A stretch of 64,000 nucleotides of DNA, taken from the NCBI GenBank assembly GCA_053919585.1, contig CM132819.1. The stretch is one strand, 5' to 3'. Within the stretch, counting starts at the first letter, position 1. Each line of letters begins with the position of its first letter. The position numbers and the translations under genes are program-made. Shown in pieces: positions 16,038 to 63,893 of the stretch. The stretch is from Euprymna scolopes (lineage: Eukaryota). The notes under the pieces are model-generated. The model had not been told where the DNA came from. It saw only the letters and a program-made list of their open reading frames with translations, and did not search any database.

Positions 16038-16163
16038 ACTACTTAATTTACTCAAATAAAATTAATATACGAAAGTATAGATTTATGCGTAAACTTTATT
16101 TACTTCAAAAGTGCTCAATACGTAGGTAGAGCTAGTTAGTAAGTTATAAATGTATATGACGAT

Positions 16164-16216
16164 TAAGCTACACTGAATATTTCGCATTTCATCCACTCTA
16201 GAATTCTTCAGGCTTA
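16164..16216 (-). ncRNA. Type I hammerhead ribozyme (family B), left arm of an inverted pair
   Basis: Minus strand reads TAAGC CTGAAGA ATTC-TAGAGT-GGAT GAAA TGCGAAATATTCAGTG TA GCTTA. Confidence 0.8.
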
Positions 16217-16357
16217 TAATTTTTAATTAATATTATACATCTTTTTATAACCTCTAATACGGATTGGACCTTCAATTGCCGAATACTGTCATTTAGAACT
16301 CATTGATAAACAACGCTTTTAATGATTAAGTTATATTTTTTCATCATGTATTAATGA

Positions 16358-16410
16358 TAAGCCTGAAGAATCCTAGAGCAGATGAAACGCGGAATATTCA
16401 ATGTAGCTTA
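16358..16410 (+). ncRNA. Type I hammerhead ribozyme (family B), right arm of an inverted pair
   Basis: TAAGC CTGAAGA ATCC-TAGAGC-AGAT GAAA CGCGGAATATTCAATG TA GCTTA; core intact, some stem mismatches. Confidence 0.75.
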
Positions 16411-16464
16411 ATCGCTATATACATTTCATAACTTACTATATATATATATATTCACACAAGTAAA

Positions 16465-16564
16465 CGGTGACTTGTTTCGGGGTTCGAATCATGCTAGTAA
16501 TTTAGTTGGTTATTTCTACACTGATGATTTTACAAAGATGAAACTCACACACATATATGTCTGT
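16465..16564 (+). mobile_element. B-box plus hammerhead element (family C)
   Basis: GGGGTTCGAATC B box at about 16478, then CTACA CTGATGA TTTTACAAAGAT GAAA CTCACACACATATATG TC TGT. Confidence 0.6.
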
Positions 16565-39260: not shown

Positions 39261-41625
39261 CGTCTATCTATAAGAATTTGACAGATGGGGTTTTATTTAA
39301 TTCGAAAGCCACTGCGTAAAGACAAATGAAAGGAAATTTCAGTTGACCAATTCTCCGTTTTAATTCAAATTTTGAAAAAAACCTTCATAAAATATGACTA
39401 AACTATTTTAAATTCAAAAAGTAAAAATATTACATGCATAAAAAAAATGTATTTTAACACGTTCATTTATGAAAAATCAAATCAAATTTTTAATCAACTT
39501 TTTAATCTCCTACATGATCTTCATTCTTTTAAATATTTTTGTTGAAGCCTCGCTAGTTTAATATTAGTCACATTTCACACTTGCCATCGATTTGAAAAAG
39601 AGAAAATTCATTGAAAAATAATTTAAATTTAAACAAATATAAACAGAAAGAAGCAGAAATTTACACGAAGGAATGGTTCCAAAAAGATAATTCACTCTGT
39701 AAATCTGGTTTTATCCTTGAAAGAAAAAAAATGAAAGCGAATCTCAAACCGCCTTCCCCCTCTCTCCTATAAACTCTTGAACATCAAAGAGGCCGTCAGT
39801 GTATCTGCCAGATGTAGGCAGAGATGATGCAGTTCTTTGGATAGAAGGAAGAAATTTGAAAGCAAGGGGATGAAGAGAAAGATGGTGCCCTCAATAGTTT
39901 CAATGCGAGAGCTACTGCAGAAGAATATCAGCTGCGACGATGCTCGAGTGATGCAGGAGAGGTAAGGCGACGTAAAGGGGTAAGAGGGGGTCGGTGCACT
40001 GTACTTCCCCAAAAAACACCTGCTATCAGAGAATAGATGCTAGGTTGGTGAAGACTGAAGAATACAGGAGGCAAAGGAGAAAGAGAAAGAAATTGCTGAA
40101 GCTTTCTTGCACTGATATTGTCACACCAATGTGCGTTGCCATAATTGCGTTATATTGAACCACGAATTTGATTGAAGAGCCTTCAAGTGAATTCAATATA
40201 TATTTGGATTTTGCTTATTTTCGTTTTTTTTTTTTTTTTTGCGGGTATCTATTTTTTATTTATTCTCAGCTAGCAAGAGAAAATTCTTTTGATTTTGTTC
40301 ATAAGATTTATATTAGTTCTGTGAATATATCACTATCTCTTTCCTCAAATATGGGGAAGGTAATCCTTAGGAAGATTGCATCATGACCTCAGACAGATAC
40401 ATTATCCCTCACTCCACTAAGAAAAATGTAAATCCTATGAGGATAGTATCATGATTGGACAGATATTACAATAACCTCACATCACCACTCCAAAAAGGAG
40501 AAGGTAACTTATAACCAAACAGATACTACACTACCTTTACACCCCAAGACAATGCCTAAGATGATGTCGTGACTGCAGAATAGATACTGCAGTATCCTCT
40601 TGAATTGAACATTTGAAAATCATACAATAATTATAGTATGCTTTAGGTTTTAGACAAATACAAAAGTTCCATTAGTAATAAATATTACACTTTTCCAAAC
40701 CAAAGGAGAACATAATGCCTAGGAATGTACATAAATGAGCATATACTACATACACACTCTTACAGGAAGAGGTAATACCTGAGGGACGGTATCATGACGC
40801 GAAGCAGATACTATAGCACGTCACCCTCTCCAAAATGAGCGTTTACAGTTATTACATAAGTCTGATAAACTGCACTAAACCTTAAAATATAGTACAATAG
40901 TATAATTAATCGAAGTAATAGCAAAGTTTTGGATTCAGACGAATACAAAATTTGTTATCAATCGGTTTACACACCAGTTATTAATAGTTATTGCTCACTG
41001 GCAATAACAAGTTCTCTGGATTTTCAGTGAGAACAAAATTCTCCAGATTTCACATACTCTCTACAGCTTTCGATACCGTTGAAAATCTTTTATTGTTTTT
41101 GCAACATCCGTTTACCATTTTACCCCGATAACAACCATTGATGTTTTCTGTAACTTGAGTGTCAATAACTTTCATCAAGACTCCAGTGCTGTTCACATTA
41201 TTAGGGAAGCATGGATAGTGTTCTCCCTTCTTGGTCATTGCACTGTTCTTGACCCTTCACAATCATTTTAAATGGTCATCACACTCGAGGTTGAGCTTTC
41301 ATGTAGGATAATTAACTTAGCACAAAGCATTACTATTCATGATTAGCACAGTTCTATGGATAAGTGTTCATGCAATATAGAGATAATTTCTCTTATTGTC
41401 GGTGGGCACATAAAACTGCAGGAATAAATTGTCCAACTGCTGATAAGAATTTCAAGTAATCTGGCGATCGAGTTTCAAATCTTTGTCCAATGATGTCTAG
41501 CCACATTGCAGAGCAATGATATAACGAAACAGCCATCTGTGCATATATAGCGTAATGGTTAGGAGCATTGACTGTCATACAGACGGTCGGGTTTCAATCC
41601 TAGCTTGAGGTAGTTGCCTGTCTAG

Positions 41626-41669
41626 CCGCACTGATGAGCTGTGAAACAGCGAAACAGTACTGTATGTGG
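41626..41669 (+). ncRNA. Type I hammerhead ribozyme (family A, copy 1), intact core
   Basis: Stem I CCGCA/TGTGG; core CTGATGA (41631); stem II GCTGT-GAA-ACAGC; GAAA; palindromic stem III CAGTACTG; GTA triplet with predicted cut after 41664. Confidence 0.88.
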
Positions 41670-41886
41670 ATGATTATAATGCTCCTCATCTTGAGTTGAG
41701 CATATTGAGAAATGATACACGAATTACCATTAGCATATAAGCGACGCTGAGGTATTTTGGACGATGTAAAAACATTGTTAAACTCACTACTCGCTCAGCA
41801 GCCGCCAATAGCATAATGGTTAGGAGCCTTGACTGTCGTACAGACGGTCGGGTTTCAATCCTGGCTTTAGGTAGTTGCCTGTTTAG

Positions 41887-41930
41887 CCGCACTGATGAGC
41901 TGTGAAACAGCGAAACAGTACTGTATGTGG
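41887..41930 (+). ncRNA. Type I hammerhead ribozyme (family A, copy 2), intact core
   Basis: Same sequence as 41626-41669, 261 bp downstream; predicted cut after 41925; followed by (TA)n. Confidence 0.88.
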
Positions 41931-41932
41931 GG

Positions 41933-41977
<45 letters not shown>

Positions 41978-59614: not shown

Positions 59615-60050
59615 AATACCCTAACCGGCTGTAATCGTAACTCCCTGTATTGATAATTCCTGAAAGGATGAAACACTAGTATCTGTAGGTATTAAAAATA
59701 ATTCTAGTAATAATTATGTTATCCCCTTTAAGAACTTTGTTCTTATTGTTGAACACAATGTTGAAATAAGTTGGTCACTTAAGCTTACAGGCGCAGATCA
59801 TGTTATAATCATAAGATCACACTAGCCGACTATGATATTCACACTTTATATAAATATTAATTTCAACTGTATTTCTTGTGGTTAACGTTGGGCCTGTGGT
59901 TTTTTTCCTTGCTAATGGAGTTAGAGATGGCTTCGTGTCCGGGTTCGAATCTCCCAACTGGCTATAATCTTAACTCCCTACACCGAGGATTCCCGAAAGG
60001 ATGACACACTAGTGTTTGTAAGTATTAAAAATAATCATAGTAATAATCAT
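59615..60050 (+). mobile_element. Tandem family C element: two decayed hammerheads 333 bp apart
   Basis: Motifs CTGTA TTGATAA TTCCTGAAAGGAT GAAA CACTAGTA TC TGTAG (59645) and CTACA CCGAGGA TTCCCGAAAGGAT GACA CACTAGTG TT TGTA (59978); B box GGGTTCGAATCTC at 59941. Confidence 0.7.
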
Positions 60051-63598: not shown

Positions 63599-63612
63599 AT
63601 ATATATGGCGAT

Positions 63613-63666
63613 TAAGCTACACTGAATATTCTGCGTTTCATCCAACTATAGGATTCGTCAGGCTTA
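63613..63666 (-). ncRNA. Type I hammerhead ribozyme (family B), intact core
   Basis: Minus strand reads TAAGC CTGACGA ATCC-TATAGTT-GGAT GAAA CGCAGAATATTCAGTG TA GCTTA; stems I, II and III all pair. Confidence 0.88.
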
Positions 63667-63893
63667 TGCGCGAATTCTGTGGTTGCTTCTTGTTTTTATA
63701 TATGTTGAGGATTTCTAGTTAGCCAATCAGCTTTCTAGTATCCACCTCGCCCCTTCCTATCAGCCAATGGGCATGCATTTTATCAAACAAAGGATCTGTT
63801 TTAGAACTAGGTTAGTGCTTTTAGGTAGACGTTCTCTTTTTTTCCTTTTTTTTACATATAAATATACCTATGTGTACACACATACATGCACAT

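What the first reader, a model, noticed from the sequence alone, without database searches (positions are those of the whole stretch)
41547..41930. tRNA-headed hammerhead dimer that could release a 261-nt self-cleaved, circularisable RNA
Seen: two ~123-bp direct repeats, each with Pol III A/B boxes in a tRNA-like head (CTGTC loop, Asp-like). Each is followed by an identical intact type I hammerhead (CUGAUGA, GCUGU/ACAGC stem II, GAAA, palindromic CAGUACUG stem III, GUA cut). Predicted cut sites at 41664 and 41925 are 261 nt apart. The tRNA heads differ at several positions while the two ribozymes do not differ. Known: tandem type I hammerheads a few hundred nt apart define animal non-LTR retrozymes, schistosome SMalpha combines Pol III boxes with a hammerhead, and minimal hammerheads with palindromic stem III can work as dimers. 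Inference: this may be an undescribed Pol III-driven SINE-retrozyme hybrid family in this lineage.
Basis: partly seen in the sequence, partly recalled or inferred. Interest (0 to 1): 0.9.

Follow-up and report, generated by a model that had tools for sequence, protein, structure and literature searches.

The report
Hammerhead-ribozyme SINE-like retroelement, decayed copy
This is one ageing copy of a very abundant, non-coding jumping element that pairs a tRNA-gene-style promoter motif with a self-cutting hammerhead RNA; the design is already known from blood-fluke SM-alpha elements and animal "retrozymes", so it is a real but ordinary example in a new host.

Summary
Two 132-nt direct repeats lie at 41547-41678 and 41808-41939 (93% identical, 261 nt apart). 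Each ends in a complete type I hammerhead, with predicted cuts after A41664 and A41925.

It belongs to a dispersed family:
- The 34-nt ribozyme occurs 8,364 times exactly and 31,243 times with up to 3 mismatches; the reversed control gives 0.
- The standard unit is 284 nt. The window copy lacks about 22 nt of body and has gained a TTTT run.
- Copies share one fixed 3' end (cut site, then UGUGGAUGAC, then (TA)n), have variable 5' truncation, and run from under 1 to over 3 units.
- Units within one insertion share private variants.

These are the marks of Penelope-like, target-primed reverse transcription of an RNA longer than one unit. A Penelope-like element (reverse transcriptase plus GIY-YIG) that also ends in (TA)n is very abundant here, but it shares no sequence with this family.

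The "tRNA head" has only A-box and B-box-like motifs; ARAGORN and Rfam's tRNA model reject it. Pol III transcription, cleavage and circles remain untested.

The design matches schistosome SM-alpha and animal retrozymes, so this is a new member of a known kind. The scan has already reported the same family elsewhere in this genome (s1-288415, s1-244821, s1-244820).

The parts
41460..41546 (+). Relic of an older, 5'-truncated family copy (B-box-like segment plus a decayed hammerhead whose core now reads CATTGCAGAG). It ends in a short TA remnant that directly abuts the younger insertion.
   Evidence: family D3; 77% over 39 nt, E=0.001; alignment A2.
41547..41619 (+). Head 1, which is the 5'-truncated start of the insertion. 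A-box match at 41548-41558, B-box-like motif at 41590-41600, then a linker.
   Evidence: Not called a tRNA by ARAGORN or Rfam.
41620..41674 (+). Hammerhead 1, type I. Helix I 5' strand 41620-41630; core CUGAUGA 41631-41637; helix II 41638-41650; GAA 41651-41653; palindromic helix III 41654-41663; A17 at 41664 (cut between 41664 and 41665); helix I 3' strand 41665-41674.
   Evidence: The core is identical to the family consensus.
41675..41793 (+). Non-coding body of the unit. It lacks about 22 nt at 41748/41749 relative to the 284-nt consensus and carries a TTTT run at 41755-41758 that the consensus does not have.
41794..41880 (+). Head 2, complete. It includes the 14-nt leader CAGCAGCCGCCAAT that head 1 lacks. 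A-box at 41809-41819, B-box-like motif at 41851-41861, then the linker.
41881..41935 (+). Hammerhead 2. Core CUGAUGA 41892-41898, A17 at 41925 (cut between 41925 and 41926), helix I 3' strand 41926-41935. This is the fixed 3' end of the element.
   Evidence: 27 of 30 family loci end at this position.
41936..41975 (.). (TA)n microsatellite at the 3' junction, the preferred target or tail of the family.
   Evidence: Contig loose ends at the same junction in sequencing runs.

Best explanation
The stretch is one insertion, 1.45 units long, of a dispersed, non-coding, non-autonomous retroelement family. Its standard unit is 284 nt; the unit here is 261 nt.

Each unit, read from the ribozyme cut site, consists of:
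- a structured body;
- a head with A-box and B-box-like motifs;
- about 30 nt of linker;
- a minimal type I hammerhead.

Inferred life cycle:
1. A genomic copy with at least two hammerheads is transcribed. The promoter could be the head of the upstream unit (Pol III, as proposed for SM-alpha) or read-through from outside.
2. The two ribozymes cut. They may act as a double hammerhead through the 10-nt palindromic helix III. This releases a unit-length RNA.
3. The RNA can be circularised by a tRNA ligase, as shown for other animal retrozymes.
4. A reverse transcriptase supplied in trans copies an RNA longer than one unit, either a circle read round and round or an uncleaved multimer. The likeliest source is the abundant Penelope-like element, which has the same (TA)n preference. 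Priming is from a nicked (TA)n target at the UAUA just past the cut site.
5. The result is copies with one fixed 3' end, variable 5' truncation and 1 to 3 or more tandem units.

Shown here: the anatomy, the copy number, the insertion signature, shared variants within insertions, and the presence of a matching Penelope-like element.

Inferred only: Pol III use, cleavage, circles, and the identity of the mobilising enzyme.

The window copy is old and decaying neutrally, although both of its ribozyme cores happen to be intact.
For: Copy number and family:
- 6,860 first-look candidates for the dimer.
- The 34-nt ribozyme occurs 8,364 times exactly and 31,243 times with up to 3 mismatches, against 0 in the controls.
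- The standard unit is 284 nt and occurs in 2- and 3-unit arrays.

Insertion signature:
- 27 of 30 loci end at ...GGATGAC followed by (TA)n.
- 12 of 30 also have (TA)n at the 5' side.
- 5' ends fall anywhere in the unit, or extend into a third unit.
- Copies shorter than one unit exist, as do two tail-to-tail insertions in one (TA)n.

One template per insertion:
- Units of one array are 98.2-99.6% identical in 4 of 5 arrays and share private variants.
- Units from different arrays are 93-98.6% identical.

Ribozyme:
- All core positions are present.
- The minimum-energy fold of two ribozyme segments together is the double hammerhead, with a 10-bp helix III and both helices I and II.

Unit RNA structure: folded as a circle, z = -3.6 for the window unit and -3.8 for the consensus, against dinucleotide shuffles.

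Candidate partner:
- 15,396 first-look GIY-YIG candidates.
- Its copies also end in (TA)n.

Published marks of Penelope-like elements are 5' truncation, partial tandems, (TA)n bias and a hammerhead near the 3' end (PMC8557442). Retrozymes have been argued to be non-autonomous Penelope-like derivatives (bioRxiv 10.64898/2026.07.22.740005).

Head module: the spacing from B-box to hammerhead is kept in three different families within this window.

RNA: family sequences are present in poly(A) RNA-seq assemblies, 316-398 contigs per run.
Against: - No sequence is shared between the element and the last ~1.4 kb of the dominant Penelope-like element.
- No autonomous element carries this ribozyme. Only 260 exact sites lack the family linker, and those listed (first 100) look mostly like truncations or internal deletions of the family element. 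The partner is therefore assigned by insertion pattern alone.
- The head fails every tRNA test. Its B-box departs from the consensus at two key positions.
- Rfam hammerhead models score below their threshold.
- The free-energy gain on dimerisation is no larger than for shuffled sequences.
- The active monomer fold lies about 3.5 kcal/mol above the minimum-energy fold.
- The RNA evidence consists of contigs only. It cannot show ends, strand or circles, and DNA carry-over or intronic read-through is not excluded.
- The ribozyme is not significantly better conserved than the rest of the unit among copies.
Confidence: 0.8

Rival explanations
1. It is an ordinary tRNA-derived SINE mobilised by a LINE (non-LTR element) whose reverse transcriptase makes or recognises a (TA)n tail. 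The hammerhead is only a passenger, or serves as a 3'-processing signal. The tandem units arise from template switching.
For: Box A/B motifs, short non-coding units, high copy number, 5' truncation and a simple-repeat 3' end are all typical of SINEs.
Against: - (TA)n flanks both sides in at least 12 of 30 loci, so it is a target rather than only a tail.
- Multi-unit copies with a fixed 3' end are the Penelope-like and retrozyme signature (PMC8557442).
- An abundant Penelope-like element with the same (TA)n habit is present.
- I did not look for a LINE partner.
Confidence: 0.1
2. The template for reverse transcription is never a circle. Copies are made from uncleaved linear multimer transcripts that run into the donor's own (TA)n flank. 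The hammerhead plays no part in propagation, or even hinders it.
For: - Genomic copies extend 10 nt beyond the cut site into (TA)n, so the last ribozyme of the template was uncut or religated.
- Naiad-type Penelope-like elements proliferate without hammerheads (PMC8557442).
- There is no evidence for circles here.
Against: - Circular RNAs are documented for other animal retrozymes (PMC7229834).
- Units within one insertion share private variants, as rolling-circle copying predicts. A homogeneous donor array would give the same pattern.
- The UAUA microhomology at the junction fits priming on either kind of template.
Confidence: 0.25
3. The dimer is a local DNA-level tandem duplication (satellite-like), not a retrotransposed copy.
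For: Two head-to-tail repeats at one locus; hammerhead satellites are known in newts and crickets.
Against: - There are thousands of dispersed copies with unrelated flanks, an identical 3' end and graded 5' truncation.
- The window holds only this copy and one adjacent relic.
Confidence: 0.02
4. This particular copy has been co-opted by the host, for example as a source of a regulatory circular RNA or as a cis-cleaving element in a host transcript.
For: Both ribozyme cores are intact although the repeats are 7% diverged.
Against: - At about 3.5% divergence per copy, the chance that both 34-nt cores stay intact is about 9% (my own calculation), so this is unremarkable.
- 7 of 30 sampled loci keep two intact cores.
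- The body carries a deletion and a new TTTT run.
- Substitutions are spread evenly across the family.
Confidence: 0.03

Closest known systems
Schistosome SM-alpha / Sj-alpha SINE-like elements (Ferbeyre et al. 1998 and Laha et al. 2000, as summarised in PMC6765202 and PMC2770079)
   Same: A short non-coding unit in which a tRNA-type Pol III promoter region lies just upstream of a type I hammerhead. Tens of thousands of copies. Units occur in tandem, so the upstream unit can drive transcription of the next one. After cleavage the promoter and ribozyme sit at the 3' end of the released RNA.
   Different: - The SM-alpha head is recognisably tRNA-Gln-derived and is called by tRNAscan-SE (PMC2770079). 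This head fails ARAGORN and Rfam's tRNA model.
- The ribozyme sequences are unrelated.
- Helix III here is a short palindrome of the dimer-prone kind.
- This family has a strict (TA)n target and a fixed 3' end 10 nt past the cut site.
- The host is a different phylum. Earlier scan notes say mollusc; I did not verify this.
Metazoan non-LTR retrozymes (Cervera and de la Pena 2020, PMC7229834; review PMC7761336)
   Same: Type I hammerheads in tandem units of 150-400 nt. Non-coding, GC below 50%, structured unit RNA, co-occurrence with Penelope-like elements. A weak or palindromic helix III, as in the amphibian examples that need dimers.
   Different: The review states that metazoan retrozymes show no promoter and no conserved motif pointing to a mobilising element. 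This family has box A/B motifs and a clear (TA)n and 3'-end signature. Circular RNA is not shown here.
Non-autonomous derivatives and pseudo-LTRs of Penelope-like elements (PMC8557442; PMC4209133; bioRxiv 10.64898/2026.07.22.740005)
   Same: 5' truncation, partial tandems, insertion into (TA)n, a hammerhead near the 3' end, and head-to-tail multi-copy insertions.
   Different: Described non-autonomous forms share their 3' ends with an autonomous family. Here no sequence is shared with the dominant Penelope-like element, and no autonomous element carries this ribozyme. The hammerhead has a real helix III (3-4 bp) rather than the helix-III-less minimal form.

Membership tests
Hammerhead ribozyme, type I | Conserved core: C3 U4 G5 A6 N7 G8 A9, G12 A13 A14, the A15.1-U16.1 pair, and H17 not G | tested here: met
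   CUGAUGA, GAA, A15.1/U16.1 and A17 are present in both copies and in 8,364 exact genomic copies.
Hammerhead ribozyme, type I | Three helices around the core, with helix I open (the 5' and 3' ends lie in helix I) | tested here: met
   Helix I is 5 bp plus a 3-bp distal segment. Helix II is 5 bp with a GAA loop. Helix III is 3-4 bp and palindromic. The designed fold scores -9.1 to -11.3 kcal/mol. The two-strand minimum-energy fold is the double hammerhead.
Hammerhead ribozyme, type I | Score at or above Rfam's gathering threshold | tested here: not met
   No hit at gathering score. The best is Hammerhead_3 at 22.4 and 18.7 bits against 48.5. Short palindromic helix III variants commonly fall below these models (my own knowledge).
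Hammerhead ribozyme, type I | Mg2+-dependent self-cleavage at H17 | not testable with these tools
   Needs in vitro transcription.
tRNA-derived SINE | Head derived from a tRNA (cloverleaf or clear homology to a tRNA) | tested here: not met
   ARAGORN finds nothing in the window or in 37 loci, even at 70% of its thresholds. Rfam's tRNA model gives no hit at E<=10. Only the T-arm-like segment and the box motifs remain.
tRNA-derived SINE | Internal Pol III promoter: box A and box B at tRNA-like spacing | tested here: inconclusive
   Box A matches 10 of 11 positions. The box-B-like GGTTTCAATCC departs at two positions. The gap between them is 31 nt. Sister families in the window have the canonical GGTTCGAATC at the same distance from the ribozyme. 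The consensus has no T4 run, but that is not statistically unusual. Function is untested.
tRNA-derived SINE | 3' tail shared with a partner LINE, or A-rich | tested here: not met
   The 3' end is a hammerhead followed by (TA)n, with no poly(A).
Metazoan non-LTR retrozyme | Non-coding tandem units of about 150-400 nt, each with a type I hammerhead, dispersed in the genome | tested here: met
Metazoan non-LTR retrozyme | Unit-length circular RNA in vivo | tested here: inconclusive
   The family is present in poly(A) RNA-seq contigs, but contigs cannot show ends or circles, and a tandem reference hides back-junctions.
Metazoan non-LTR retrozyme | Co-occurrence with Penelope-like elements | tested here: met
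Non-autonomous Penelope-like element | Insertion signature: 5' truncation, partial tandems, microsatellite (TA)n target | tested here: met
   Same (TA)n ends in the autonomous element.
Non-autonomous Penelope-like element | Sequence similarity of the 3' end to an autonomous family | tested here: not met
   No match to 30 loci of the dominant family. The ribozyme is exclusive to this element.

The most novel reading that the evidence does not exclude
This may be a retrozyme family that carries its own Pol III promoter and its own priming site. The head of an upstream unit would transcribe the downstream unit. The ribozymes would release a 284-nt RNA that is circularised. The UAUA box 11-14 nt past the ligation junction would then anneal to a nicked (TA)n target, so that a Penelope-like reverse transcriptase copies the circle by rolling target-primed reverse transcription. 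If so, this would be the first animal retrozyme for which both transcription and mobilisation can be read from the sequence and tested directly.
Probability: 0.25. Interest if true: 0.6.

Novelty: new member of a known kind. Interest (0 to 1): 0.3.

Why it matters
Reviews of animal retrozymes state that these elements show no promoter and no motif pointing to the enzyme that moves them (PMC7761336). This family offers both kinds of clue: box A/B motifs at a fixed distance from the ribozyme, and a sharp (TA)n and fixed-3'-end signature shared with a resident Penelope-like element. With about 31,000 ribozyme copies it would be a convenient system for testing Pol III-driven retrozyme expression and circle-templated reverse transcription outside flatworms.

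It also suggests that SINE-like elements may be under-counted in automated repeat annotation of large invertebrate genomes. The single copy in this window has no special importance.

Tried and rejected
- Rfam at gathering score found no ribozyme or tRNA. In E-value mode there were only sub-threshold type III alignments. These alignments use an upstream GUC that cannot form a helix I hairpin, so I rejected the type III reading.
- ARAGORN at 100, 90, 80 and 70% of its thresholds never calls the head a tRNA. I dropped 'tRNA-Asp-like'.
There were only 260 hits, and those listed were mostly truncated or internally deleted family copies.
- BLAST of the unit against 30 Penelope-like loci found nothing. 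A regex scan of those loci found no canonical hammerhead downstream of the open reading frame, only a near-core variant in the 3' untranslated region.
- The dimer free-energy advantage is not different from shuffled sequences.
- A conservation test of ribozyme against the rest of the unit across 23 independent units was not significant.
- Laying reads gave contigs only, with no molecule ends.
- Taxon identification by protein atlas was uninformative. The host is therefore given only as an animal with a 5.9-Gb genome.
- Ferbeyre et al. 1998 could not be read. SM-alpha details are taken from PMC6765202 and PMC2770079.
The result is unaffected.
Full report
**What is in the sequence**

Window 41547-41939 holds two direct repeats of 132 nt, at 41547-41678 and 41808-41939. 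They are 93% identical with a start-to-start spacing of 261 nt.

Each repeat ends in a hammerhead that I can place base by base:
- Helix I 5' strand: GUC-UA-GCCGCA.
- Core: CUGAUGA (41631-41637 and 41892-41898).
- Helix II: GCUGU/ACAGC closed by GAA.
- G12-A14: GAA.
- Helix III: the 10-nt palindrome ACAGUACUGU, which folds as 3-4 bp.
- H17: A, at 41664 and 41925.
- Helix I 3' strand: UGUGG plus a distal GAY.

The ends lie in helix I, so this is the type I topology.

Rfam does not call it at gathering score. In E-value mode it gives 22.4 and 18.7 bits against a threshold of 48.5, aligned to the type III permutation. That alignment uses an upstream GUC, but the 8 nt between that GUC and the core cannot form a helix I hairpin. 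I therefore keep the type I reading.

**The head**

There is a 10-of-11 match to the textbook box A (TAGCGTAATGG, 41548-41558). Thirty-one nt later there is a box-B-like GGTTTCAATCC (41590-41600).

It is not a recognisable tRNA:
- ARAGORN finds none in the window or in 37 family loci, even at 70% of its thresholds.
- Rfam's tRNA model gives nothing at E<=10.

The 'Asp-like CTGTC loop' is not supported. The family consensus folds that region into a long hairpin.

Two other hammerhead families in the same window, at about 59880-60045 and 16460-16545, carry a canonical GGTTCGAATC at the same distance from their ribozyme cores. The head-linker-ribozyme module is therefore shared and probably descends from a tRNA-type SINE head.

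**It is a family, and this copy is a variant**

- The dimer has 6,860 first-look candidates in the 5.9-Gb assembly.
- The 34-nt ribozyme occurs 8,364 times exactly and 31,243 times with up to 3 mismatches. The reversed control gives 0.
- Many exact copies sit 284 nt apart in pairs and triplets.
- The standard unit is 284 nt.
- The window unit lacks about 22 nt of body at 41748/41749. It has a TTTT run at 41755-41758 that the consensus lacks.
- Just upstream, 41460-41546 is a much older 5'-truncated relic of the same kind of element. It ends in a TA remnant. The younger copy therefore landed in the tail of an older one.

**Insertion signature**

In 30 loci with unrelated flanks:
- 27 end at the same base, 10 nt past the cut site (...GGAUGAC), followed by (TA)n.
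- 12 also have (TA)n directly 5'.
- The 5' ends fall anywhere in the unit or reach into a third unit.
- Copies shorter than one unit, and two tail-to-tail insertions in one (TA)n, also occur.

The internal unit junction reads GACUAUAR and the terminal one GACUAUA(UA)n. The junction with the target is therefore ambiguous by 4-5 nt. This fits priming by a (TA)n 3' end on the UAUA of the RNA (inference).

The terminal 10 nt are exactly the 3' strand of helix I. Every insertion therefore ends in a complete ribozyme.

In five multi-unit arrays, units of one array are 98.2-99.6% identical in four cases and share private variants. Units from different arrays are 93-98.6% identical. The units of one insertion therefore come from one template.

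**Who moves it**

- The genome has 15,396 first-look candidates for GIY-YIG, with many open frames of 804-808 aa.
- One open reading frame has RVT_1 plus a C-terminal GIY-YIG domain. It resembles clusters with the same domain set. This is a canonical Penelope-like element.
- Its copies also end in (TA)n.
- Published marks of such elements are 5' truncation, partial tandems, (TA)n bias and a 3' hammerhead (PMC8557442). A 2026 preprint argues that animal retrozymes are their non-autonomous derivatives (10.64898/2026.07.22.740005).

Against a simple derivation:
- The unit shares no sequence with 30 loci of this element.
- Only 260 exact ribozyme sites lack the family linker, and those listed (first 100) look mostly like truncations or internal deletions.

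The partnership rests on insertion pattern alone.

**Ribozyme and RNA properties**

- The active monomer fold scores -9.1 kcal/mol for the window copy and -11.3 for the consensus. The minimum-energy folds score -12.9 and -14.7.
- The minimum-energy fold of two segments together is the double hammerhead, with a 10-bp helix III. However, the energy gain is not larger than for shuffled sequences.
- Folded as circles, the window unit and the consensus are more stable than dinucleotide shuffles (z = -3.6 and -3.8). One young unit is not (z = -1.4).
- Poly(A) RNA-seq assemblies of one study, and several runs of uncertain kind, hold the family. These are contigs, so they show neither ends, strand nor circles, and DNA carry-over is possible.
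- Runs of three other organisms held almost none of the family's words.

**Selection**

- Across 23 independent units, substitutions per non-CpG site are 5.8% in the body, 5.4% in the head and 4.5% in the ribozyme (p = 0.22). The copies decay neutrally.
It is what dead copies of any retroelement show, so it says nothing about the source copies.
- In the window, the 48-nt ribozyme block is identical in the two repeats while 9 differences lie elsewhere. This is nominally unlikely (about 0.02) but the block was chosen post hoc.
- 7 of 30 sampled loci also keep two intact cores.

**Comparison with known systems**

The closest published design is schistosome SM-alpha/Sj-alpha. It is a tRNA-derived Pol III head followed by a type I hammerhead, in tandem units, in tens of thousands of copies. 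The upstream unit is thought to transcribe the next one (PMC6765202, PMC2770079).

The family also fits the definition of metazoan non-LTR retrozymes (PMC7229834, PMC7761336), except that those are described as lacking promoters and mobilisation motifs.

I found no paper describing such elements in this host. The giant squid genome paper merely counts 235 Rfam hammerhead hits (PMC6962438). A cuttlefish genome paper reports almost no SINEs in decapodiform cephalopods (PMC13218726). I could not verify the taxon of this assembly.

**Earlier scan notes**

The same family was reported elsewhere in this genome with the same verdict (s1-288415, 284-bp array; s1-244821 and s1-244820, 286-bp units). 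Sister families were also reported (s1-244819, s1-288414). My tests were run independently and agree.

**Verdict**

This is a real hammerhead dimer in a real, very abundant SINE-like retrozyme family. It is a new member of a known kind. This copy is an ageing deletion variant of no individual importance.

Noticed in passing
window 41460-41546: An older, strongly decayed 5'-truncated copy of the same kind of element (B-box-like segment plus a mutated hammerhead) directly abuts the 5' end of the studied insertion. The younger copy apparently landed in the older copy's (TA)n tail.
   Followed up: partly
window 59615-60050: A second head-plus-hammerhead family (333-bp period) with a canonical B box (GGGTTCGAATC). 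Its ribozyme cores are altered: UUGAUAA in one copy, which looks like the published U3-A8 covariant, and CCGAGGA in the other. The B-box-to-core spacing is the same as in the studied family.
   Followed up: partly
window 16460-16545: A third element with a canonical B box about 40 nt upstream of a CUGAUGA...GAAAC motif. It ends in (CA)n, and its helix II is weak.
   Followed up: no
window 16150-16215 (-), 16350-16415 (+), 63608-63671 (-): Copies of another hammerhead-like motif (AAGCCUGAAGA...GAUGAAACGCGGAAUAUUCA...), here as an inverted pair and a single copy. The same motif occurs inside one Penelope-like locus (L066, position 1979).
   Followed up: no
L052, L057, L045 (G000:C2:14893471-14896722 and others): The dominant Penelope-like element has an open reading frame of about 806 aa with RVT_1 and GIY-YIG, over 15,000 first-look candidates, and often occurs as inverted pairs. 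Its ~560-nt 3' untranslated region contains poly(A) tracts and a near-hammerhead core (CUUGAAGAAGCCCG...CGGGCGAAAC) about 75 nt before a 3' end that runs into (TA)n.
   Followed up: partly
G000 sites listed, e.g. C4:33399329, C6:45080273, C9:4271471: The same 11-12-nt deletions in the linker or helix I 5' strand (GGTAG|CCGCA and GGTAGTTGC|ACTGATGA) recur at several unrelated loci. Either these are sub-lineages that still spread without the distal or whole helix I strand, or they are recurrent microhomology deletions.
   Followed up: no
L035 (G000:C1:58530500-58532200): A two-ribozyme copy with a 234-nt unit. It lacks 50 nt spanning part of the head hairpin, the B-box-like motif and the linker, yet both ribozymes are exact.
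   Followed up: no
L037:680-1220: Two independent family insertions lie tail-to-tail in one long (TA)n/(GA)n/(TAA)n microsatellite. One of them is only about 100 nt long (head 3' half plus ribozyme).
   Followed up: partly
window 41612-41664: Upstream CUGUC and downstream CUGUA can both pair with the ACAG that follows the GAAA. That is why Rfam aligns the motif as type III. This may give a competing inactive fold.
   Followed up: partly
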